Part shown: positions 11,334-61,800 of the stretch, piece after piece
Position numbering within the stretch: position 1 is the first letter of the stretch
Layout of the letters: every line of letters begins with the position of its first letter
NCBI RefSeq assembly: GCF_003918875.1
Contig: NW_025767035.1
Span: forward strand, 1,488,001 to 1,552,000
Reading direction: 5' to 3'
DNA: 64,000 bases
Origin: Haliotis rubra
Taxonomy: Eukaryota
Program-made: the position numbers and the translations under genes
The notes under the pieces: generated by a model
Database searches by the model: none
Told to the model about the DNA's origin: nothing
Seen by the model: only the letters and a program-made list of their open reading frames with translations

Positions 11334-13055
11334 TGTGCCTTCTGCCCAAAGACCCTGGAAATTGTTATGGTTACTTCCTTAAGTACTACTTCAACAGCAG
11401 GACGTGTCTCTGTGAGAAGTTCGTGTACGGAGGGTGTCCGGGGAATGCCAACAATTTCGACACTCTAGAGGACTGCAGGCGTAGATGTGGAGGTAGAGTA
11501 CTTTAAACCGTTGACTTTCCCAAAAATTGACAGGTTTTTGCCAAAGTGTGTTTCAACACTACACCGTCACCCGTCACTAGACACACGTCAGTCGTGATTG
11601 AACGATGTTCCGGCGCACTGTCTTGATCAAATATCGTTTTAACTGTTATTAAGTTCAATGATATTGCATTTTAAAGATCATTGTTATCATGTTAACTAAT
11701 TTTAATACACTGTTCCATAAAAGATAGTTTTGTTGTATGTTAAAGTGATTTTATTTTATGAGGTACTATTATCATAGCGAAGTTATGTTATTACCGCTAG
11801 AGAAGTTAGCTTTAATACGCACATGAATACGAATCAGCTATTAGAGGTCACAAGTCCTGTCACCGGGTGTTTTTTATTTCGTGGTTCTTTTTTTTAAATT
11901 ACATTATGGGTAATAAATAGAATAACCAACTCGGTACGAGTGATTACGGGAAATATGTCCTATATGTACCTCGCTGGTTATTCTTTAAGTAATATGATAC
12001 ATTGTATTGTGTGAAATACGTAAAGGTTGTTACTTACAAATAGCAATGGGGGTAACCACATCTTTAAAGCGTTCGCTCGTCACGCCGAAAGCCTGGGTTC
12101 GATAACGTGTTTATAACGTGGAATATTGCGTTTAGCACGCACTCACTCACTATATTACTAATTTTCGGCAAATTGTATTAAAATGACAGAGGTACTTCCA
12201 GTGATTGTATAATTACTCAAACACATTATGTCCGTAATGATAGACGTTTTAAGTTTCCCGAAACCATAGGTCTGTTTGTGTTGAGGTACATACACATCCC
12301 TCTTGATTATAATTAGTTGGACATAATGAGAATGATAGAATTCTTTAGTGTCTACTACTTCAGCACATCTAAAAGGGGATTACACCATGGAAATACAAAA
12401 ATGAATTAATATAAGAAGACAAATGATAATGATATTGAAAATATAGAAAAATACATGCAAGGAAAGACAACTTACAAGTTACTTCTTTCTAAACCTCTCT
12501 TTAGTATAATTCATTTTATGGTTACAGTGTTTCTCATTATTCTATTCATAATATTCTTTGTTTAGATCGGGGATAATCTACAGCGTCTTCTATTCTCCCT
12601 GTTTAGATGTACGATATAACAATAGAACAATATCATTATTTATAAATTTATGTTTCCCTGGCGCTTTCTTGTGTTTTATGTTGCTGTTTTGTGTGCGCGT
12701 GCGTGGTTGTAGTTGTGATGGTGGTGGTGTGGTCGTCATAGTGTTGGTGTGCTCGTCATGGTGGTTGTTGTTGTGGTGGTGGTCGTCGTCATGGTGGTGT
12801 GGGTGGCGTTAATCTTGGTAGCTCTTCAACACGTTTTAATACAACATATTCCTCTCCCTTTCGTGTCCAGGCGGTGTCCTCTGCAGCCTCCCCAGAGATC
12901 CGGGTCCTTGTGACGATGACATCCCCAGATGGTGGTACAACAAACGTACAAACAGATGTCAGAGATTCAGCTATGGAGGCTGTGAGGGGAACGCCAACAA
13001 CTTTAAAACACTTTACGAGTGTCGCTTCCAGTGTCGGAGAGGATGGGCATATTAA
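11334..13055 (+). CDS. K2: double-Kunitz gene, exons 11334-11492 and 12871-13055; signal-peptide exon not found
   Basis: Both exons are open and phase-1 compatible: [120 protein letters not shown] near 13128. Confidence 0.82.
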
Positions 13056-15750: not shown

Positions 15751-16428
15751 ACATAACTTTGTCCACGTTTTACTACACGTTGCCGAAACCGAAACTAGGT
15801 GTTTGCTCGTATTTATGTGGCCACCATCTGGTCAATTACCAACGAATCCGTGGGTTCTTTTTCAGTGCACAGTGTTGTGTACTGTACACTAGCGGTTGTG
15901 ACAACACCGAAAGAGTCAGCACACATAGTTCATTCCAAGATTTTTACACCCGGTAACAAGTGGAATATTTATCTTTGGGAAAGAATTTACCAGCCTCCGT
16001 CTTTAATTACAGGATGATTAGTGCTTCATGCACTGTTGGAAATTAATATACACACCGTGATTTCAGTGTGCCAGCTGCCCAAAGACCCCGGTCCATGCAG
16101 AGCGTACTTCCAAAAGTACTACTTCAACAGCAGGACGTGTCTCTGTGAGAAGTTCGTGTACGGAGGGTGTGGGGGGAATGCCAACAGATTCGAAACTCTG
16201 GAGGACTGCAGGCGTAGATGTGGTGGTAGAGTAATGTGTAGTAATATATGTCTATTCCTTACGTGGGTATACCGTGTTGAGCCTTAATATTCCTGGATAT
16301 GTCTCTGTGTGTGTGCGTGCGCGTGTGTGTGGAAATTTTGGGTTAGTTCGTTAGTTTGGGTTATTGATTCCTCACATGGGTATAACGTGTTGAGCCAGGT
16401 GTCCCCGCCTTGATATTCCTGGATACGT

Positions 16429-21570: not shown

Positions 21571-23031
21571 ATGCCACCCTTGTCCTTCTGCCAGCTGGGT
21601 TTGGTGTTGGTATTGGTTGGTCTGACCTCAGCTAAATATCATGATGGTAAGTACACCTTTCCTAGTTACCTATTCATTCATACTAATATTTGTATAGCGC
21701 CAATATCCAGCTCAGCTGCTCAAAGCGCTTTGTGTTTCCCTCTATCACTGGATGTCAATTGTATTTGCAATCCCAACTCCCTGGGGATTATAGTACTCAT
21801 GCAGCCACTAGGCGCACCAAGTTAATGTAGCTTTCCCATCCCTACAGGGTATCCATTCACAGCTGGGTGGACTGGGACACATAGCCACATAACTTTGTCC
21901 ACGTTTTACTACACGTTGCTGTACCCGAAACTAGGTGTTTGCTCGTATTTATGTGGCCACCATCTGGTCATTTACCAACGAATTCGTGGGTTCTTTTTCA
22001 GTGCACAGTGTTGTGTACTGTACACTAGGGGTTGTGACAACACCGAAAGAGTCAGCACACATAGTTCATTCCAAGATTTTTACACCCGGTAACAAGTGGA
22101 ATATTTATCTTTGGGAAAAAATTTACCAGCCTCCGTCTTTAATTACAGGATGATTAGTGCTTCATGCACTGCTGGAAATTAATATACACACCGTGATTTC
22201 AGTGTGCCAGCTGCCCAAAGACACCGGTCCATGCAGAGCGTACATCCCACAGTACTACTTCAACAGCAAGACGTGTCTCTGTGAGAAGTTCGTGTACGGA
22301 GGGTGTGGGGGGAATGCCAACAGATTCGAAACTCTGGAGGACTGCAGGCGTAGATGTGGAGGTAGAGTAATGTGTAGTAATATATGTCTATTCCTTACGT
22401 GGGTATACCGTATTGAGCCTTAATATTCCTGGATATGTCTCTGTGTGTGTGCGTGCGCGTGTGTGTGGAAATTTTGTGTTTGTTCGTTAGTTTGGGTTAT
22501 TGATTCCTCACATGGGTATAACGTGTTGAGCCAGGTGTCCCCGCCTTGATATTCCTGGATACGTGGGGCGGTGGGATAGTCCAGTGGTTAAAGCGTTTGC
22601 TTTGCTCACGCTTGTTCGATTCCCCACATGGGTACAATGTGTAAAGCCCATTTCTGCTGTCCAACGCCGTGATAGTGCTGGAATATTGCTAAAAGCGGCG
22701 TAAAACCAAACTCAGTCAGTCCTGGATACGTGTGTGCGTGCGTGTGTTTGTAAAAGTATGGGTTAGTTATTGTATGAGGAGGGTGGTGCTGGTGTTAATC
22801 TTGGTGGCTCTTCAACAGGTTGCATACATGTTTCTCTCCCCTCCAGGCGGCGACCTCTGCAGCCTCCCCAAAGATCCGGGTCAGTGTGCGGCCGCTATCC
22901 GCAGATGGTGGTACAACAAACGTACAAACAAATGTCAGAGATTCATCTATGGAGGCTGTCCGGGGAACGCCAACAACTTTCAAACACTTTACGAATGTCG
23001 TTTCCAGTGTCAGAGAAGATCGACATATTAA
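21571..23031 (+). CDS. K4: intact secreted double-Kunitz protein, 139 aa; exons 21571-21646, 22203-22361, 22847-23031; resembles a Haliotis shell-matrix Kunitz protein
   Basis: [139 protein letters not shown]. All introns are phase-1 GT-AG; AATAAA at 23104. The similarity to the H. asinina shell protein is from memory. Confidence 0.95.
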
Positions 23032-29627: not shown

Positions 29628-30587
29628 TCAGAAAGGTTCACTCTTGTCGAATTCAGGATGCCTGTGTGCCCATTCATTTGTAAAATATTTTACAGTGTTG
29701 TCTAGCTTAAGCAGCTTCTCAAAATCACTTGATGACAACTTCCAGTCAAATATATCCAGATTGTCTTTAATTCTCTCGAAATTTTGACTCTTAGGTAAAA
29801 CACCCATACCCTTAAGCAATAAGAAGTTTAACAATATCTGTCCTGGAGTCTTTTTGTACTCAAACGATAATTGTTTCACTTGTGGATCTTCAAGCAGCAC
29901 CAGATCTTCTGGCTTTTTATCAGGCTTAGATGGTGCACCTAGTGGTGAATATGCAGTAAGTATAATGTTTTTCTCTCCACAAAACTCAACAAGCTTCTTC
30001 TGCTGCCAGTAAGCATGTGCCTCGAGTTGAAGATTTGCAGGCTTGATTTTAGCTTTGTCCCATATCCTCTGAATCTGTTCTGGGTTGAAGTTAGATACTC
30101 CAATGCTTTTGGCCCAATTCTGACCATGCATCTGTTCAAAGGCAGACCATGTTTCCAGAAGGTCGTGATGCTTCAACTCACGTTCTCCTTTCGAATTGAG
30201 AGGTTTGAGCGTTCCAACCCCTCTGTTGACATTACCCCAAGGTTGGTGAATTAACAACAAGTCGACATGTGTTTGTTTGAGACTTTCTAGCGACATTTCG
30301 GCACTTTTGATCGCTGCATCTCTTTCCAAATAAGCACATGGTACTTTTGTTGTGATAAACAAATCTTTCCTTTTATTTTTCCCAGCCCTAATCCTATCTT
30401 TAATGACCTCGCCCACTTCAACTTCGTTACCATAGCTTAGCGCTGTGTCGATATGTCTGTACCCCAGGAACAGAGCGTAATCGACCGCCCTTTTCAATGC
30501 GTCACCTTTCATAAGATAGGTTCCAAGCCCGACAGCGGGCATACGTAGGCCATTATTCATAGACAAATAGCTCATAATAGACGCCAT
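29628..30587 (-). CDS. Intronless aldo-keto reductase (AKR1-like), 319 aa
   Basis: MPAVGLGTY, GYRHIDTALSYGNE, LFITTK, DLLLIH, KSIGVSNF, AYSPLG and LPKS motifs; catalytic Asp-Tyr-Lys-His tetrad present; single uninterrupted ORF. Confidence 0.96.
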   Translation of the reverse strand: MASIMSYLSMNNGLRMPAVGLGTYLMKGDALKRAVDYALFLGYRHIDTALSYGNEVEVGEVIKDRIRAGKNKRKDLFITTKVPCAYLERDAAIKSAEMSLESLKQTHVDLLLIHQPWGNVNRGVGTLKPLNSKGERELKHHDLLETWSAFEQMHGQNWAKSIGVSNFNPEQIQRIWDKAKIKPANLQLEAHAYWQQKKLVEFCGEKNIILTAYSPLGAPSKPDKKPEDLVLLEDPQVKQLSFEYKKTPGQILLNFLLLKGMGVLPKSQNFERIKDNLDIFDWKLSSSDFEKLLKLDNTVKYFTNEWAHRHPEFDKSEPF

Positions 30588-34638: not shown

Positions 34639-37600
34639 TCAATATACAGGCTGTTGAACACGCCGACACACGCGATGGCACTCTTGCAGAGTTTTGAAGT
34701 TGTTGGCGTTGCCACCACAGCCGCCGTATAGAAACTGCTCACACTGGCCGCTGGCAGGGTTGAAGAAGTAGCGACGGAAGGCAGCCCGACAACGTCCGAT
34801 CACCATCGGAAGACTGCAATTGTCTGGAACAGACGTATCAAAGACATGATTTGGAGGTTAGGTGATAACTCTCTTCGGTATTTGAACGATGTATTTATTT
34901 CGTGACCAACATCGTGTTATCGTGTTATCGTACAAGCCGAATAGGGATCTTATTGCGGGTTGCGGAAAGAGGCGAGTGCTGATGGATATTTCCCAAAACT
35001 TTCAAAAGAGCAGTAACTCTCTTTTTAATGTGACAAAACTAAATGTTGTTATCCACCCTTGCTGATATCGCACTCGTAAGAAACACATCTGTAAATAGCG
35101 TTGGTATACCTACCATCAACCATGACGGGTCTGCGTGTAGGGCGGACACCACCGTATGTGTGGAATGCAGGAACACACACAGTTCTTCCATAGCGCTCCA
35201 CGCACCGGGAATTCTTTCCACATCGCGTGAACTGTAATATTTGATGCATACATTATGTTTGTTTGCCTCTATGTTTGTTTCTTGTTTAACGCCGTGCTTG
35301 CAATTTTTCAGCTGTAACAAAATGAGTCTGGACCAGACAATCCAGTGACTGATATCATGAGCATCGATCTACTCCGCTGGGATACTGCAACATGCATCAG
35401 ATATTACACCCAGGCTCGTCACTACCCGTTAGTCACCTCTTACGAAAAGCATGGGTTTCTGAAGACCAGTTCTAAAACAGGTGTCGCGAAAAACACTCAT
35501 TTACTCACATTGTTTACACAATGTTCAGCGTAATACACAAGCAAGCGTTAAAGAACGTATACTGTTTAGTATTAATTTAGAACTTTACCCGAAGATGCAA
35601 TATAACATACGCGTTATCTTTGTATGCAATTATAAACATATCTGAAAATAGTGAGCGAACTGTATTTCATTTTTTTTTTTCAACTAGAAAACAAATGTTG
35701 AAGAATAGCCCGCAGATGTTTCAGAAAAATGATAAGAAAATAATGATCACTGTTTTACAAACCAATAATCACAAACAAAGCTAATATTATTGATAACATT
35801 ATTGAAATTACGACAATATATCGCCGTGCCTAATGCCCTTGCCCGTGGCCATGCCACAACAATCAATCATTTCTGCTGAAAAGGTCTACTCCCATTTGTG
35901 AGAACTCCCAGTTGTGAGACTCCCAGTTATGAGACAGTGGAGTAGGTAATTAACAACGAAAACACACCATGCTCCCCTGTCTGATAGAATGGATTCACCC
36001 TAGCTAATTACTGATTTGCTATGTAACTGAATCTTGTGGAGGTAACTTAATGAAACTTTATAGGATAAATTGATTAACATACTCAGGTAAATGTCTTTAA
36101 TAATTAAACACTTTGTGTAGGTAACTTCGTGATCAAAGAGAAATTAATTTACCTACTCAGATTTACTCCGTCTCCGAAACTACAAGCTATAGTTTGAGAA
36201 ATAACTCTGAAATTACTCTGAAATTTACAGTCGAAATGCCCCTTATGCCAAACCCTTTCTACCCGACACAATACATTTAGTGAATGCCCTACCAAATTCC
36301 AAAGAGTCATGCAGTCTCAAAGAATTTTAAAACCTAATTACAAAAAAACGAAAACAAGATTTATATTGATCTTATATATTTTTGAACGGAAACAAAGAAT
36401 TTACTCCTTGTGTAAACCAGAAAATAGTTGAATCCGTCCACGATTATATCATCAAGACACAACCTTCATGTTTCACAGGGAAATACTGAAATTAACTCAA
36501 TCTTCTCGTGATTGATTTATATTAATTATTACAATAGATTGTTACTTAGAGAATAGTTGTATTTGATGTAATCTGTATATATTTATATGTATAAAATAAA
36601 AATGTGTTATCATAATTACATATTCTTCTGAATAAATAAAATACTCAATGAACTATGCCTCCTGTGGGTACTGGGCTGGGCTGATCCCACTTTCATTGTA
36701 GGGATGTGGAAACACCACCTATGTGCACTGAACCATTAATTAATGTGTCTCACAACTGGGAGTTCTCACAAATGGGAGGACACCGCTGAAAATACTACCC
36801 ATCAAAAGTTTAGACTCACTTAAAGCACTCACTATATATATATATATATACACATAACATATATTCATGTGTAAACAGTACTTTTAAACAGTATGGAATA
36901 TTTTGCATATCTAGTTTAGAACAGTTGACTGAAGTAAGTGGCTACATCTACACTAGTGAGTCTAAACATTTGATGGGTATATAGGAAAATACTGATTAAT
37001 CATTTGCTACTTCCTTACCAAGCAGCGTGGTGAGACTTTGGGGTGTGTCCTGTCGCTGGGGTTGTCCAGCAGGCTGCCACCAAGGCTGGGCCACGTGTTA
37101 CACTTACACTCTCCGGGGACCATACCATTGAGGCAAAACAACAAGCATCTTGGAACCGGTTCTGAAAACACGAGTGATTTCTGTGAAGTAACACTACGAT
37201 TCGACTACGGATTCTTTAGATGAAGATGTGATTCCAAACTTTATATCCTTGACATTACCGATTATTATCGTCGTTCAATATGTCTCCAACTACGGTGAAA
37301 TCGAGTTACTAATGTCTTTATAAGACTGATCGCACAGTGATGGAGATGTTCATGGAATGAATATCAGTCATAAGCGCACCTGTCCACAGGATCATAAGAT
37401 GCCAAAAGTAAATACCAATTAACCAATAGTTTGAAATAGGTATGCCGAAAAGTGTCAGTATGAGAAAGGCAGGTCAGTCTCATGCATTACAAATTTATGA
37501 TTTTTCCTGTCGTACTGCATCCGTATACCGGTTCAGGGCCAACTGTTCATTTGGTCAGAATGGGGCGTATTTGTGTACTTTCGTTTACCCGGAAAATTGT

Positions 37601-37831
37601 AACAATGTCCACTTGGCATTAGCGCTAGGAATGATTGTTATTTAATCGACCGCAAACTTTGTTGAAAGTTTAGGAATTAAAAAATTGTAAGCCACAATGA
37701 AATGCAACCGCTTTGAGAAAAGAATGGTCTTTGGAAACGAAATTGAAATGGTCAATGTACGTACCTATAAACGAACTCGCTTCAACTGCGGCGAGAACAG
37801 CAATGGCACACAGGACTGTTTTGATGTCCAT
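34639..37831 (-). CDS. K5: secreted 170-aa protein, signal + 4-Cys module + FOLN-like 4-Cys module + Kunitz; exons 37831-37765, 37161-37019, 35231-35114, 34823-34639
   Basis: Four GT-AG exons with matching phases (1,0,1): [170 protein letters not shown]. Confidence 0.88.
35883..36784. mobile_element. ~900-bp non-autonomous DNA transposon in a K5 intron
   Basis: Inverted repeats ctcccatttgtgagaactcccagttgtgagac, GG..CC ends, 8-bp TSD GCTGAAAA (Merlin-like features; superfamily uncertain). Confidence 0.85.
36795..36979. mobile_element. Tc1-type MITE
   Basis: TIR tacccatcaaa(a/t)gtttagactcact at both ends, flanked by TA. Confidence 0.8.
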
Positions 37832-38644
37832 ATTGTTATCTGCAACAACAAACGTTGGGATAGTTTATGACCTTTCGTTTCATCTGACACAACGCCTTAG
37901 ACCATGTGTCACCTGTCAGTCACAACGGTACAGGTGTCTCCGACTGTGAGGTAAGTGTGGCTTAGCGTGCTAGGGGAACGTTTGTCAGTAACACCCTCAG
38001 GTAAATATGTACTTGCACTTACTCTTGCATTCTTTGAGCTTATAATAAAAAATTCTTCTGTACGAAAATCGGTCAGATATATTATTTTAGAAATATAGAT
38101 GAGATTGAAGAATTTACTAGTTTGTGACTTTGAATAAGTTAGTTGAATCTAACTAAAATATAGTTAAAGGTATAATTGTATAAGGCGACCTGTGTGTCTT
38201 TATGTGTTTATCATCTTCAAGAAGGAAACCGGACGGGCCGGCGAACCAAAGACAATATATCACGTTTTCACAAGTCTTGTTACTTGTTTTATGATAATGC
38301 TAATAATGTTTAAATTTATGTTCCCTCGGAATTTTATTTGAAATAAATATAGTTCAATGATGATCAAGCTGAGCTAGCGAGGGGGTATGAGAGTGCAAGA
38401 GTAAGGGTATTGTTTCATCATATCGGGGCATTAATATTCGCAGTACCGAGAACAATTGAGATAGAAAACCATATTTTAATTCACATCGGAATGAAATTCA
38501 GGGTGGGCAGGAGGCGGGTTACTCAAAACAAATATGGACAACGTAAACCGCAAAACTGAAATGAGATTTATCATAACGTACAGATGGGTCTAATTCATTA
38601 TACATGTGTACTTAAATAATTGAAATATTATATTTAAATCATAC

Positions 38645-38880
38645 CTGGTCGTTGTAATATGTCGACACCGTGCGAGATTCGGCAGAAAGGTCTTGTTATG
38701 AGAATCAAGTCGCTGTCAGCGTCTTTATATACACCAGATAGGTAATAACTTGGGAAACTATACACAGAGTGTCACGACAAGTAAACGTTTTCTGAATTCT
38801 GATTGGTTGAAGAGATGTGACGTCAGCTGTCCATGTCTGACATGTCATTCTTCAAGTGAGTTGTCTCCTGCATGCGTCAG
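38645..38880 (-). promoter_or_regulatory. K5 non-coding exon 1 (~38700-38645) and promoter
   Basis: Minus-strand TATATAAA at 38731-38724, cag|GTATGA donor at 38644, CCAAT near 38802-38806, palindromic CRE TGACGTCA at 38818-38825. Confidence 0.7.
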
Positions 38881-39254
38881 TTGCAACGTAAACACCATAC
38901 CATCAGGCTGTTGTTATTCACTTGAATGAAAGTTGGCATCAATCATTTTCGCATCCACCAGCACAACGTGACACCGACACACTTCCGCATCCGAAGTCGC
39001 TTAATTATGTCAACACTCGTCAGCCCCTGTCTCCTGTATACAGCGCTGCACATCGTCATAGGTAGTCTTAGGTCTCCTTATGACGCGACGTTTCTTTAGA
39101 AGACCGCATAGGCGGATCCAGAGGGGGGTGGGGGGGTGCGCACCCCCCTTATGTGCTGAAAGTCTGTTAAATGACCATTGAAACGCCCCTGAGACCTATA
39201 TAAACCGAGAAACAGCTCATAGACCTATATAGCTCTATTTAGATCCTTATGATG

Positions 39255-55860: not shown

Positions 55861-58800
55861 CTACTTGAGACGGTATAATCCCAGACACTGGTGTACTTGC
55901 TGGTCTACAGTGGACCTTGGCCAGGGTTGACTAGGGTGTACATACTTGTCAGTTGGTATGGTGACGTTCACAGAGAAAAGTGAGAGTGAGGGCTGGCCCA
56001 TGTCCGGTATCCTCACTAGCTCCTTTAGGGGCATTGTCTCCAGGCCCCACATGATGGAGAAGTAGCCCTGGAACATCACAACATCATTATTGCAGGAATA
56101 GATACCGGTGGGAGAACCAGTGACGGACACTAACAGAATGGATCAGTGACGACACCAGGTGTTCGCAATTTAGGTAAACATGCTTTCTTCTCACACAATT
56201 TGCACAAAAGATGTGCGTATGTTGGCCATCACTGCCCCCACCAATATGCTATACAGCCATACATTAACATGATATACAACCATATAATCATATACCATAT
56301 ACTTATGCCATACAGCCATCCATTAATATGATATTCAACCACATACCAATATACCCTATACCTATACACCAATATGCTATACAGCCATACATTAACATGA
56401 TATACAACCATATACCAATATATCCTATACCTATACATCAATATGCTATACAGCCATACATTAACATGATATACAACCACATACCAATATACCCTATACC
56501 TATACACCAATATGCTATACAGCCATACATTAACTGACTGACTGAGTTTTAGTTTTACATCACCTATACAGCAATACAGCAATATACCAATACCTATCCA
56601 TCAATACATCAATACACCATACATTAACATTAACACATTGTGCAATATATCCATGTACACCTAATCAATGCCTATCTTAACGGATATACGAACCAATATC
56701 TTTATAACCACTACCTACACTTATACATCAATATGCTATACAGCCATACATTAACATGATATTCAACCACATATCAATGTACCCTATACCTATACATCAA
56801 TATGCCATACATTAACATGATATACAACCATATACCAATATACCCTATACCTATACATCAATATGCTATATAGCCATACATTAACATGATATACAACAAT
56901 ATACCAATTTACCCTATACCTATACATCAATTTACTATACAGCCATACATTAACATGATATACAACCACACATCAATATACCATAAACCTATACATCAAT
57001 ATGCTAGACAGCCATACGTCAGCGTATATCCCAATTTCGTAGGTTGATGCTCAGGCTGTTGTTTACTGGATTGTCTGGTCTAGACTTGATTATTTGCCGA
57101 CTGACGCCATATCGCTTGAATATTGCTGAGTGTGGTGTTAAACAATAAACCAAACCAAAACCATACATCAATATGCTATACAACCATACCATACAACCAT
57201 ACATCTATAAACTACATAACCCCACATCAGTTTACTATACAATACATCAATATACCATACAACCACACATCTCTATACCATACAACCACACATCCGTATA
57301 CTATACAACCACACATCTGTATACTATACAACCACACATCTGTATACCATACAACCACACATCTGTATACCATACAACCACACATCTGTATACCATACAA
57401 CCACACACCTGTATATCATACAACCACACATCTGTAGACCATACAACCACACAACTGTATACTATACAACCACAAATCTGTATACTATACAACCACACAA
57501 CTGTATACCATACAACAATCCACACACACATCTGTATACCATACAACCACACACCTGTATACTATACAACCACACATCTGTATACTATACAACCACACAT
57601 CTGTATACCATACAACCACACATCTGTAGACCATACAACCACACATCTGTATACCATAAAACCACACACATCTGTATACCATACAACCACACACCCACAC
57701 ATCTGTATACCATACAATTATACAACCACACACCTGTATACCATACAACCACACATCTGTATACCATATCTGTATACCATACAACCACACATCTGTATAC
57801 CATACAATCTGTATACACATCTGTATATACCATACAACCACACTGTATACCATACAACCACACATCTGTATACCATACAACCACACACACTGTATATATC
57901 ATACAACCACACATCTAGATCATACAACCACACAACTGTATACTATACAACCACACACATCTGTATACTATACAACCACACAATTGTATACCATACAACC
58001 ACACATCTGTATACTCCATGTATACATACAACCACACACCTGTATACTGTATACCATACAACCACACATCTGTATACTACATACAACCACACATCTAGAC
58101 CATGTATATACTATACAACCACACATCTGTATACAACCACACATCTGTAAACCATACAACACACATACTGTATACCATACAACCACACACACTGTATACT
58201 ATACAACCACACATCTGTATACATACAACCACACATCTGTATACCATACTACCACACATCTGTATACCATACAACCACACATCTGTATACCACAACCACA
58301 CATCTGTATACCATACAACCACATCTGTATATTATACACCTAATACCTGTATACCATACAACCACACACCTGTATACTATACACACCACACATCTGTATA
58401 CTATACAACCATACACTATAATAACCACACATCTGTATACCATACAACCACACACATGTACAACTACATCTGTATACTATACAACCACACATACTGTATA
58501 CTATACATCAACACACACCTGTATACCATACAACCACACACCTGTATACTACATACAATATTATACCACCATACATACCACACACACATCTGTATACCAT
58601 ACAACCACACATCTGTATACCATACAACCACACATCTGTATACTATACAACCACACATCTGTATACTATACAACCACACATCTGTATACCATACAACCAC
58701 ACATCTGTATATTATACAACCACACACCTGTATACCATACAACCACACATCTGTATACCATACAACCACACATCTGTATACTATACAACCACACATCTGT

Positions 58801-61800
58801 ATACCATACAACCACACATCTGTATACCATACAACCACACATCTGTATACCACATACAACCACACACATCTGTATACCATACAACCACACATGTATACTA
58901 CAACTACACATCTGTATACCATACAACCACACATCTGTATACCATACAACCACACATCTGTATACCATACAACCACACATCTGTATACCATACAACCACA
59001 CATCTGTATACCATACAACCACACATCTGTATACCATACAACCACACATCTGTATACCATACAACCACACACCTGTATACCATACAACCACACATCTGTA
59101 TACCATACAACCACACATCTGTATACCATACAACCACACATCTGTATACCATACAACCACACATCTGTATACTGTATACCATACAATCTGTATACATACA
59201 ACCACACACCTGTATACCATACAACCACACACCTGTATACCATACAACCACACATCTGTATACCATACAACCACACATCTGTATACCATACAACCACACA
59301 TCTGTATACCATACAACCACACAACTGTATACCATGAAACCACACATCTGTATACCATACAACCACACATCTGTATACCATACAACCACACATCTGTATA
59401 CCATACAACCACACATCTGTATACCATACAACCACACACCTGTATACCATACAACCACACATCTGTATACCATACAACCACACACCTGTATACCATACAA
59501 CAATACATCAATATACTATACAATAAATGTATAGGGAAGAGTTTCTCCAAAATACATGAATGTGAAGAAGACAAGGCCCACACAGTTTGAGGTGGAAGGG
59601 CACCTGTCATTAATACTTACTGGTGTTGCTTTAACCCAGTGGTCAAGGTGGAAGGGCACCTGTCATTAGTACTTACTGGTGTTGCTTTAACCCAGTGGTC
59701 CAGGTGGAAGGGCACCTGTCATTAGTACTTACTGGTGTTGCTTTAACCCAGTGGTCAAGGTGGAAGGGCACCTGTCATTAATACTAACTGGTGTTGCTTT
59801 AACCCAGTGGTCAAGGTGGAAGGGCACCTGTCATTAGTACTTACTGGTGTTGCTTTAACCAAGTGGTCAAGGTGGAAGGGCACCTGTCATTAATACTTAC
59901 TGGTGTTGCTTTAACCCAGTGGTCAAGGTGGAAGGGCACCTGTCATTAATACTTACTGGTGTTGCTTTAACCCAGTGGTCAGGGTGGAAGGGCACCTGTC
60001 ATTAGTACTTACTGGTGTTGCTTTAACCCAGTGGTCAAGATGGAAGGGCACCTGTCATTAATACTTACTGGTCTTGCTTTAACCCAGTGGTCAAGGTGGA
60101 AGGGCACCTGTCAGTAGTACTTACTGCTGTTGCTTTAACCAAGTGGTCAAGGTGGAAGGGCACCTGTCATTAATACTAACTGGTGTTGCTTTAACCCAGT
60201 GGTCAAGGTGGAAGGGCACCTGTCATTAGTACTTACTGGTGTTGCTTTAACCAAGTGGTCAAGGTGGAAGGGCACCTGTCATTAATACTTACTGGTGTTG
60301 CTTTAACCCAGTGGTCAAGGTGGAAGGGCACCTGTCATTAATACTTACTGGTGTTGCTTTAACCCAGTGGTCAGGGTGGAAGGGCACCTGTCATTAGTAC
60401 TTACTGGTGTTGCTTTAACCCAGTGGTCAAGATGGAAGGGCACCTGTCATTAATACTTACTGGTCTTGCTTTAACCCAGTGGTCAAGGTGGAAGGGCACC
60501 TGTCAGTAGTACTTACTGGTGTTGCTTTAACCCAGTGGTCAAGGTGGAAGGGCACCTGTCATTAATAATTACTGGTGTTGCTTTAACCCAGTGGTCCAGG
60601 TGGAAGGGCACCTGTCATTAATACTTACTGGTGTTGCTTTAACCCAGTGGTCCAGGTGGAAGGGCACCTGTCATTAATACTTACTGGTGTTGCTTTAACC
60701 CAGTGGTCAAGGTGGAAGGGCACCTGTCATTAATACTTACTGGTGTTGCTTTAACCCAGTGGTCAAGGTGGAAGGGCACCTGTCATTAATACTTACTGGT
60801 GTTGCTTTAACCCAGTGGTCAAGGTGAAAGGGCACCTGTCATTAGTACTAACTGGTGTTGCTTTAACCCAGTGGTCAAGGTGGAAGGGCACCTGTCATTA
60901 ATACTTACTGGTGTTGCTTTAACCCAGTGGTCCAGGTGGAAGGGCACCTGTCATTAATACTAACTGGTGTTGCTTTAACCCAGTGGTCAAGGTGGAAGGG
61001 CACCTGTCATTAATACTTACTGGTGTTGCTTTAACCCAGTGGTCAAGGTAGAAGGGCACCTGTCATTAATGCTTACTGGTGTTGCTTTAACCCAGTGGTC
61101 AAGGTGAAAGGGCACCTGTCATTAGTACTTACTGGTGTTGCTTTAACCCAGTGGTCAAGGTGGAAGGGCACCTGTCAGTAGTACTTACTGGTGTTGCTTT
61201 AACCCAGTGGTCAAGGTGGAAGGGCACCTGTCATTAGTACTTACTGGTGTTGCTTTAACCCAGTGGTCAAGGTGGAAGGGCACCTGTCATTAGTACTTAC
61301 TGGTGTTGCTTTAACCCAGTGATCAAGGTGGAAGGGCACCTGTCATTAATACTTACTGGTGTTGCTTTTAACCCAGTGGTCAAGGTGGAAGGGCACCTGT
61401 CATTAATACTTACTGGTGTTGCTTTAACCCAGTGGTCAAGGTGGAAGGGCACCTGTCATTAATACTTACTGGTGTTGCTTTAACCCAGTGGTCAAGGTGA
61501 AAGGGCACCTGTCATTAGTACTTACTGGTGTTGCTTTAACCCAGTGGTCAAGGTGGAAGGGCACCTGTCATTAATACTTACTGGTGTTGCTTTAACCCAG
61601 TGGTCAAGGTGAAAGGGCACCTGTCATTAGTACTTACTGGTGTTGCTTTAACCCAGTGGTCAAGGTTCTTTTGAAAGGTCACTGTGAAGTTTTGGCCTCC
61701 ACTGAAAGTAAGTTGGACCTTATCAGAAAACAAAATATCAGAAAATCCCAACTTGAACACTGGAATAAAAACATTTGTCAGGAATATAATATTTACCTTG

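What the first reader, a model, noticed from the sequence alone, without database searches (positions are those of the whole stretch)
34639..37831. Unannotated gene with an unusual Cys-module / FOLN-like / Kunitz architecture
Seen: a fully phase-consistent 4-exon ORF that the ORF track does not recover. Module 1, [16 protein letters not shown] (C-x3-C-x8-C-x-C), resembles a shortened antistasin-type repeat. Module 2, [22 protein letters not shown] (C-x4-C-x5-C-x8-C), fits the follistatin N-terminal (FOLN) pattern. Known: FOLN is normally followed by a Kazal domain; here it precedes an Arg-P1 Kunitz. Inference: an exon-shuffled multi-headed inhibitor that may be undescribed.
Basis: partly seen in the sequence, partly recalled or inferred. 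Interest (0 to 1): 0.72.

Follow-up and report, generated by a model that had tools for sequence, protein, structure and literature searches.

The report
Abalone Kunitz inhibitor with cysteine-rich extension
This is a real, conserved abalone gene for a small secreted Kunitz-type protease inhibitor carrying an abalone-only, cysteine-rich front part of unknown role; public databases already predict the gene, so it is a modest variant of a well-known family.

Summary
The four-exon, minus-strand model (37831..34639, 513 nt, 170 aa) is correct. All introns are GT-AG and the phases fit. Its translation is identical to RefSeq model XP_046577525.1, "BPTI/Kunitz domain-containing protein-like [Haliotis rubra]", so it is unannotated only in the ORF track.

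Orthologues of 166-173 aa exist in H. asinina, H. rufescens and H. cracherodii. The two loci I could read have the same four exons and phases. dN/dS is 0.17-0.23. All 14 mature cysteines are invariant.

Exon 4 is a canonical Kunitz domain (Pfam 9e-22) with Arg at P1.

Exons 2-3 encode two 4-Cys modules as conserved as the Kunitz domain (78% and 88% invariant columns, against 14% in the linker between them). I found no relative outside Haliotis and no paralogue in this 1.38 Gb genome.

Resemblance to known modules is faint:
- Module 2 aligns to this genome's own follistatin N-terminal hairpins over all four Cys, at the bottom of the range of true hairpins. It lacks the fifth Cys and the Kazal part.
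- Module 1 scores far below true antistasin repeats.

No transcript support was found in the runs laid. Both structure models were unusable.

Most likely this is a secreted inhibitor of trypsin-like proteases with a genus-specific N-terminal extension. The scan had noted this same stretch before.

The parts
37765..37831 (-). Exon 1: start codon (A at -3, G at +4) and signal peptide (aa 1-22 plus the first base of codon 23). The likely cleavage after V-E-A (aa 18) is inferred.
   Evidence: Hydrophobic core shown. Same exon in H. asinina and H. rufescens.
37162..37764 (-). Intron 1 (GT..AG, phase 1)
   Evidence: A related DNA run carries a 40-nt gap at 37696-37735 (table 8).
37019..37161 (-). 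Exon 2: module 1 (aa 24-46, C-x3-C-x8-C-x-C, coded at 37091-37159), the variable linker (aa 47-60), and the start of module 2 including its first Cys (aa 61-70, coded at 37019-37048).
   Evidence: No paralogue in the genome. No relative among 1.84 billion cluster representatives other than the protein itself.
35232..37018 (-). Intron 2 (GT..AG, phase 0). It is filled with high-copy repeats (about 35229-35590 and 35772-37038) and is much shorter in H. asinina.
   Evidence: table 2: summed contig depths of tens to hundreds of thousands..
35114..35231 (-). Exon 3: the rest of module 2 (aa 71-92, coded at 35166-35231; the whole module is C-x4-C-x5-C-x8-C with a predicted beta-hairpin at aa 78-91), then a Pro/Arg-rich linker holding a conserved R-P-T-R-(R/K)-P motif.
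   Evidence: The hairpin appears in both low-confidence models. No paralogue in the genome.
34824..35113 (-). Intron 3 (GT..AG, phase 1)
34639..34823 (-). Exon 4: Kunitz/BPTI domain (six Cys at 34666-34818; P1 Arg122 codon at 34786-34788), a short basic tail and the TGA stop.
   Evidence: Pfam PF00014 at 9e-22, 77.5 bits against a cut-off of 21. Cys pattern. Closest solved chain is SmCI domain 2, with BPTI and TFPI also matched.

Best explanation
This is a functional, Haliotis-restricted gene for a small secreted basic protein (mature form about 17 kDa, pI about 9.3). The protein has a signal peptide, two short disulfide-stapled modules of four Cys each joined by a variable linker, a Pro/Arg-rich linker, and one canonical Kunitz/BPTI domain with Arg at P1. 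The Kunitz domain most likely binds the active site of trypsin-like serine proteases in the standard substrate-like way. This is inferred from the family and from the G-R-C-R-A-A reactive loop, which is invariant in four species and so suggests one conserved endogenous target. The N-terminal modules are under similar constraint. They most likely act as an accessory part, either an exosite or a matrix or surface anchor, rather than as second canonical inhibitory heads; this is inferred and weak. Module 2 is probably an EGF/FOLN-type beta-hairpin. Module 1 has no assignable family. The Kunitz exon is a phase-1 module like its neighbours, which encode the shell-matrix protein KCP. The N-terminal exons were gained or arose within the abalone lineage.
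For: The gene model equals RefSeq XP_046577525.1. Orthologues exist in H. asinina, H. rufescens and H. cracherodii. The two readable loci have the same 4 exons, GT-AG sites and phases. dN/dS is 0.17-0.23 overall, 0.21-0.33 for exons 2+3 and 0.10-0.16 for exon 4. Invariant columns are 78% in module 1, 88% in module 2 and 82% in the Kunitz domain, against 14% in the linker. Pfam Kunitz scores 73-77 bits. PDB matches include SmCI, boophilin, TFPI and BPTI, with the reactive loop aligned. Module 2 aligns with genuine FOLN hairpins of this genome over all 4 Cys and the turn Gly. Synteny with a single-exon aldo-keto reductase is kept in H. rufescens.
Against: I found no transcript evidence. The probable RNA runs X1 and X2 cover only intron repeats and 35 nt of a paralogous Kunitz exon. 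No transcript-derived protein fragments turned up in the word searches. Two peptides of the protein are absent from the held H. laevigata shell-proteome supplements, so the tissue and target are unknown. The role of the N-terminal modules is pure inference. Both structure models were unusable (pLDDT 37 and 44.5). All four database proteins are XP-type model records.
Confidence: 0.7

Rival explanations
1. One reading: an exon-shuffled multi-headed inhibitor. Module 1 would be a degenerate antistasin repeat and module 2 a true follistatin N-terminal (FOLN) module, each inhibiting or binding a partner of its own.
For: Both modules give weak full-length hhalign matches to this genome's own antistasin repeats (score 15.1, P 9e-4) and FOLN hairpins (score 15.3, P 8e-4). 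Cys-fixed shuffles reach those scores in only 4-5% of trials. Module 2 gives the same weak EGF-type Pfam hits as genuine FOLN hairpins. The modules are as conserved as the Kunitz domain.
Against: Module 1 has 4 of the 6 antistasin Cys and scores far below true repeats (40-78). The Pfam antistasin model, which is sensitive in this genome, misses it. Module 2 lacks the fifth Cys and any Kazal part. The FOLN hairpin is not itself an inhibitory head in known follistatin domains (established knowledge). Module 2 is split by an intron, so it is not a shuffled exon unit.
Confidence: 0.15
2. A precursor that is cut. A proprotein convertase would cleave at the conserved R-P-T-R-(R/K) motif (aa 100-104), releasing a cationic Cys-rich peptide (aa 19-103) and a free single Kunitz inhibitor.
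For: The motif and its flanks are invariant or conservatively changed in four species, inside an otherwise variable linker. The N-terminal part is basic (pI 9.1; module 2 pI 9.9).
Against: The motif is the only evidence. Pro follows the dibasic pair, which disfavours cleavage there (established knowledge). There are no peptide data.
Confidence: 0.1
3. An annotation artefact or a dead gene: the exons are conserved by chance or belong to different transcripts.
For: No RNA support was found in the runs laid. All database records are computational models.
Against: The ORF is intact, with the same splice sites and phases, in three genomes I read and a fourth species' model. dN/dS is about 0.2. All 14 mature Cys are invariant.
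Confidence: 0.04

Closest known systems
Kunitz/BPTI serine protease inhibitors (Pfam PF00014). Nearest solved examples: SmCI domain 2 of Sabellastarte (4bd9), boophilin, TFPI, BPTI.
   Same: The C-terminal 60 aa have the full six-Cys pattern, a basic P1 after the second Cys, and the G-x-C-[KR]-A loop and YGGC core.
   Different: The protein carries a 92-aa N-terminal extension with eight more Cys that none of these has.
KCP_HALAI, the abalone shell-matrix 'BPTI/Kunitz domain-containing protein' (PMC2989941, PMC6003135), encoded by the neighbouring + strand genes.
   Same: It lies on the same chromosomal neighbourhood, is secreted and basic, has phase-1 Kunitz exons, and RefSeq names this gene after it.
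   Different: KCP has two tandem Kunitz domains and no N-terminal Cys modules. Kunitz identity to the neighbours is only 51-57%. Two peptides of this protein were not found in the shell proteome supplements.
Follistatin-type (FS) domains: a FOLN hairpin plus a Kazal part, as in agrin, SPARC, follistatin and WFIKKN.
   Same: Module 2 has the C-x4-C-x5-C-x8-C spacing, a Gly after the second Cys and a turn Gly. A hairpin is predicted. WFIKKN shows that FS and Kunitz domains can share one protein (own knowledge).
   Different: There is no fifth Cys (a Pro stands there in all four species) and no Kazal part. The profile match is at the noise edge.
Antistasin repeats (PF02822)
   Same: Module 1 shares a C-x3-C-x-N-G stretch and a terminal C-x-C with the abalone repeats.
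   Different: It has four instead of six Cys and is shorter. The family model does not recognise it, and its score is far below that of true repeats.

Membership tests
Kunitz/BPTI (PF00014) | Profile match above the curated cut-off | tested here: met
   77.5 bits for the exon and 73.5 bits for the whole protein, against a cut-off of 21.
Kunitz/BPTI (PF00014) | Six Cys with spacing C-x8-C-x15-C-x7-C-x12-C-x3-C | tested here: met
   The pattern scan places it at 34666-34818 on the minus strand. It is invariant in four species.
Kunitz/BPTI (PF00014) | Canonical reactive loop with the P1 residue after the second Cys (Arg/Lys for trypsin-like targets) | tested here: met
   Arg122 follows Cys121. 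The loop aligns with SmCI and boophilin. BPTI numbering is from established knowledge.
Kunitz/BPTI (PF00014) | Measured protease inhibition | not testable with these tools
   This needs recombinant protein and enzyme assays.
FOLN / follistatin domain (PF09289) | Profile match above the curated cut-off | tested here: inconclusive
   There is no FOLN hit at E up to 10, only EGF-type hits at E about 0.1. As a control, of four genuine FS-domain exons of this genome scanned at E up to 1, one gave a FOLN hit (E 0.074), two gave only odd EGF-type hits (E 0.04-0.75) and one gave no hairpin hit. The model is therefore too short to decide.
FOLN / follistatin domain (PF09289) | Cys spacing C-x4-C-x5-C-x8/9-C of the hairpin | tested here: met
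   Direct reading. hhalign aligns all four Cys and the Gly.
FOLN / follistatin domain (PF09289) | Profile-profile similarity beyond the Cys spacing | tested here: inconclusive
   Score 15.3 with probability 25%. True hairpins left out in turn score 15.9-25.7. Cys-fixed shuffles reach the observed score in 10 of 200 trials.
FOLN / follistatin domain (PF09289) | A fifth Cys (C-x-C) and a following Kazal subdomain | tested here: not met
   Pro91 stands at that place in all four species. No Kazal family appears in any Pfam scan.
Antistasin (PF02822) | Profile match above the cut-off | tested here: not met
   No hit at E up to 10. The same model finds at least 59 repeats above its cut-off in this genome, none on the window's contig.
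Antistasin (PF02822) | Six Cys per repeat | tested here: not met
   Module 1 has four. hhalign scores 15.1, against 40-78 for true repeats.
EGF-like domain | Six Cys (1-3, 2-4, 5-6) and a profile match above the cut-off | tested here: not met
   Module 2 has four Cys. EGF_MSP1_1 and EGF_Pikachurin score 10-13 bits against a cut-off of 27, covering only the first two thirds of the profiles.
KCP-type abalone shell-matrix Kunitz protein | Two tandem Kunitz domains and detection in the shell matrix | tested here: not met
   There is one Kunitz domain. Two peptide strings of the protein are absent from the held H. laevigata shell proteome supplements, some of which were cut when stored.

The most novel reading that the evidence does not exclude
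The two N-terminal 4-Cys modules would be a new, abalone-born disulfide-rich domain pair with an activity of its own. That activity could be a second, non-canonical inhibitory or binding head, or a cationic peptide released at the conserved R-P-T-R-(R/K) site. The gene would then be a recently assembled bifunctional secreted protein next to the shell-matrix Kunitz cluster.
Probability: 0.15. Interest if true: 0.45.

Novelty: new variant of a known kind. Interest (0 to 1): 0.27.

Why it matters
The Kunitz part is ordinary. The mild interest lies in the front part: about 70 residues holding two small disulfide modules. They are as conserved across four abalone species as the inhibitor domain itself, yet no relative turned up anywhere else in billions of proteins, nor elsewhere in this genome. 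If they have an activity of their own, this would be a compact example of a lineage-specific module being joined to an old inhibitor domain next to a shell-matrix gene cluster. The case also shows that very short Cys modules such as FOLN cannot be assigned by profile alone, because genuine FOLN hairpins from the same genome also fail the Pfam cut-off.

Tried and rejected
1. RNA support. The look-up of sequencing runs listed no run on record as RNA. The contigs of X1 and X2 lie only on intron-2 repeats and on 35 nt of the Kunitz exon, with foreign flanks that point to a paralogue. X5 and X6 are DNA of a relative about 96-97% identical that covers all exons.

2. Pfam on single exons and on the N-terminal region found nothing above threshold except Kunitz.

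3. phmmer with exon 2 against 1.84 billion cluster representatives gave other hits, but these are bacterial MBG-repeat proteins and a low-complexity protein, which I treat as spurious.

4. Word searches on the N-terminal region (as a region of the whole protein, as a profile of three species, and as module 2 alone against short proteins) found only the Haliotis orthologues or nothing. The test for a perlinhibin-like miniprotein relative is blank. The perlinhibin paper was not held.

5. The PDB sequence search and the ESM Atlas search with the N-terminal part gave nothing usable.

6. AlphaFold2 on the three-species full-length alignment and on the four-species N-terminal alignment gave pLDDT 37 and 44.5. 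I did not run fold search because such models give meaningless matches.

7. Internal duplication of module 1 into module 2 is rejected. hhalign aligns only the P-R-C-L start, with probability 3.7%.

8. The Pfam FOLN search of the whole genome found nothing, because the model is too short for 1.38 Gb. I collected FOLN hairpins through their Kazal partners instead.

9. No paper cites any of the four accessions.

10. I did not type or search the joined spliced model. The identical database protein returned by the exon-2 search was used by its id.

Full report
**Observation**

The region holds a minus-strand gene of four exons. I read the boundaries from the sequence and checked them by script.

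| Exon | Coordinates | Length | Splice details |
|---|---|---|---|
| 1 | 37831..37765 | 67 nt | ATG with A at -3 and G at +4; donor G\|gtacgt |
| 2 | 37161..37019 | 143 nt | acceptor ttttcag; donor TTG\|gtaagg |
| 3 | 35231..35114 | 118 nt | acceptor attacag; donor ATG\|gtaggt |
| 4 | 34823..34639 | 185 nt | acceptor gttccag; TGA stop |

The intron phases are 1, 0 and 1. The exons sum to 513 nt, which is 170 codons plus the stop. The mechanical ORF list shows the exons only as four separate short ORFs.

**The model is already in public databases**

A phmmer search with the exon-2 peptide, given by reference, against 1.84 billion cluster representatives returned one true hit. This is a 170-aa protein, 100% identical over residues 24-70. 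Its full sequence equals the hand-built model residue for residue.

It is XP_046577525.1, "BPTI/Kunitz domain-containing protein-like [Haliotis rubra]". From this point on I used the stored protein (P0001) by its id.

The other four hits are spurious. Two are bacterial MBG-repeat proteins, one is a long protein with no related domain, and one (P0004) is a low-complexity repeat protein.

**Conservation**

Word searches on the N-terminal part found only three further proteins:
- H. asinina XP_067681786.1, 166 aa
- H. rufescens XP_046375932.2, 172 aa
- H. cracherodii XP_071081358.1, 173 aa

The H. asinina and H. rufescens loci (L004, L005) have the same four exons, GT-AG sites and phases.

Nei-Gojobori counts were made exon by exon and summed:

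| Region | dN/dS |
|---|---|
| Whole gene | 0.17-0.23 |
| Exons 2+3 | 0.21-0.33 |
| Kunitz exon | 0.10-0.16 |

dS between species pairs is 0.31-0.75.

In the four-species alignment all 14 Cys of the mature protein are invariant. The share of invariant columns differs sharply by segment:

| Segment | Invariant columns |
|---|---|
| Module 1 (aa 24-46) | 78% |
| Module 2 (aa 61-92) | 88% |
| Kunitz domain | 82% |
| Linker aa 47-60 | 14% |
| Linker aa 93-110 | 44% |

A single-exon aldo-keto reductase ORF lies downstream (29628..30587, minus strand), as it does in H. rufescens. This is a real gene under purifying selection.

**Transcripts**

This test gave no support, but it does not refute the model.
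- No listed run is on record as RNA.
- Contigs of the probable RNA runs X1 and X2 lie only on the repeats in intron 2 and on 35 nt of the Kunitz exon. The flanks there are foreign, which points to a paralogue.
- X5 and X6 are DNA of a relative about 96-97% identical that covers all four exons. The pieces over exons 2 and 4 have no gaps (table 8).
- Neither of the two word searches whose length range would admit such proteins returned a transcript-derived protein or fragment.

**The Kunitz part**

Exon 4 matches Pfam Kunitz_BPTI at 9e-22. It has the full six-Cys spacing. Arg122 stands directly after the second Cys, in a G-R-C-R-A-A loop that is invariant in the four species.

The nearest solved chains are SmCI domain 2, boophilin, TFPI, bikunin and BPTI. 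The genome holds at least 64 Kunitz exons, and the nearest is 65% identical. The seven other Kunitz domains in this window are 51-57% identical.

All six neighbouring Kunitz exons that I checked have a phase-1 acceptor, like exon 4 here.

**The N-terminal part**

Exons 2 and 3 have no paralogue in the 1.38 Gb genome. Four searches of public databases found no relative outside Haliotis. The PDB sequence search and the ESM Atlas search also gave nothing. The two modules are not detectably related to each other.

*Module 2 against FOLN*
- Pfam gives no FOLN hit, only EGF_MSP1_1 and EGF_Pikachurin at E about 0.1.
- As a control I collected genuine follistatin-domain exons of this same genome through their Kazal halves. 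One of the four exons scanned reached FOLN at E 0.074, two gave only odd EGF families at E 0.04-0.75 and one gave no hairpin hit. The Pfam negative therefore decides nothing.
- hhalign of module 2 against seven such hairpins aligns all four Cys and the turn Gly. The score is 15.3, the probability 25% and the P-value 8e-4.
- True hairpins left out in turn score 15.9-25.7.
- Shuffles that keep the Cys in place reach the observed score in 10 of 200 trials. Full shuffles reach it in 2 of 200.
- The fifth Cys of the FOLN motif is a Pro in all four species, and there is no Kazal part.

Verdict: module 2 is an EGF/FOLN-like four-Cys hairpin by pattern. Homology is neither shown nor excluded.

*Module 1 against antistasin*
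- The Pfam antistasin model finds at least 59 repeats above its cut-off in this genome, none of them on the window's contig. It does not register module 1 at E 10.
- hhalign against eight abalone repeats gives a score of 15.1 (probability 23%). Shuffles reach it in 8 of 200 trials. True repeats score 40-78.
- Module 1 has four of the six Cys.

Verdict: module 1 is not a member of the antistasin family, and the resemblance is faint.

*Structure prediction*

Structure prediction failed, with pLDDT 37 and 44.5. Both models place a hairpin at aa 78-83 and 86-91. I did not run fold searches on such models.

**Exon shuffling**

Exons 2 and 3 together form a phase 1-1 unit, and the Kunitz exon is a phase-1 module. 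This fits assembly from modules. However, the phase-0 intron falls after the first Cys of module 2, so the modules are not single shuffled exons.

**Context**

MS/MS peptides of the shell-matrix protein KCP in H. laevigata include C-G-G-G-V-L-C-S-L-P-R (PMC6003135). This peptide spans the junction between the two Kunitz exons of the + strand gene at 11336-13034 in this window. The neighbours are therefore KCP genes (see also PMC2989941).

Two peptide strings of the present protein are absent from the held supplements of that shell proteome. Nothing places this protein in the shell.

**Mechanism**

What is shown:
- The protein has a secretory leader.
- It has a canonical Kunitz domain with Arg at P1.
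- It has two constrained Cys modules.
- The mature protein is basic, with pI 9.3.

What is inferred:
- It inhibits trypsin-like serine proteases in the standard substrate-like way.
- The N-terminal modules serve as an exosite or anchor.

A conserved R-P-T-R-(R/K)-P motif in the second linker could be a convertase site. This is speculative.

**Verdict**

This is a new variant of a known kind, is already predicted in RefSeq for four species, and is of low to moderate interest.

Noticed in passing
window 11336-13034 (+) and 22205-23010 (+); also 1487-2854 and 16069-16221: The + strand double-Kunitz genes are the abalone shell-matrix protein KCP. The H. laevigata MS/MS peptides C-G-G-G-V-L-C-S-L-P-R and [11 protein letters not shown] span the splice between the first and second Kunitz exons seen here.
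   Followed up: partly
window 38383-39092 and 37832-37843: A block upstream of the ATG is more conserved with H. asinina (82%) than its surroundings. An AG preceded by a pyrimidine-rich run lies 8 nt before the ATG in all three species. This may be a 5' UTR exon with an intron, or a promoter.
   Followed up: partly
window 35229-35590 and 35772-37038 (intron 2): These are very high-copy repeats. Summed contig depths in DNA runs of a relative reach 10^4 to 10^5, with many joints and loose ends. The same intron is far shorter in H. asinina.
   Followed up: no
window 29628-30587 (-): An intronless 319-aa ORF matches in position a 319-aa aldo-keto reductase gene downstream of the H. rufescens orthologue, and the DNA is 81% identical. 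It may be a retrogene, and its position is conserved.
   Followed up: partly
window 57173-59610, both strands: Long ORFs here are made of a tandem repeat that reads as Cys/Val/Tyr-rich peptides in several frames.
   Followed up: no
G000:C2189:378185-544839 (+): A row of at least eight follistatin-type (FOLN plus Kazal) exons spread over about 170 kb looks like an agrin-like gene. I used it as the FOLN control set.
   Followed up: partly
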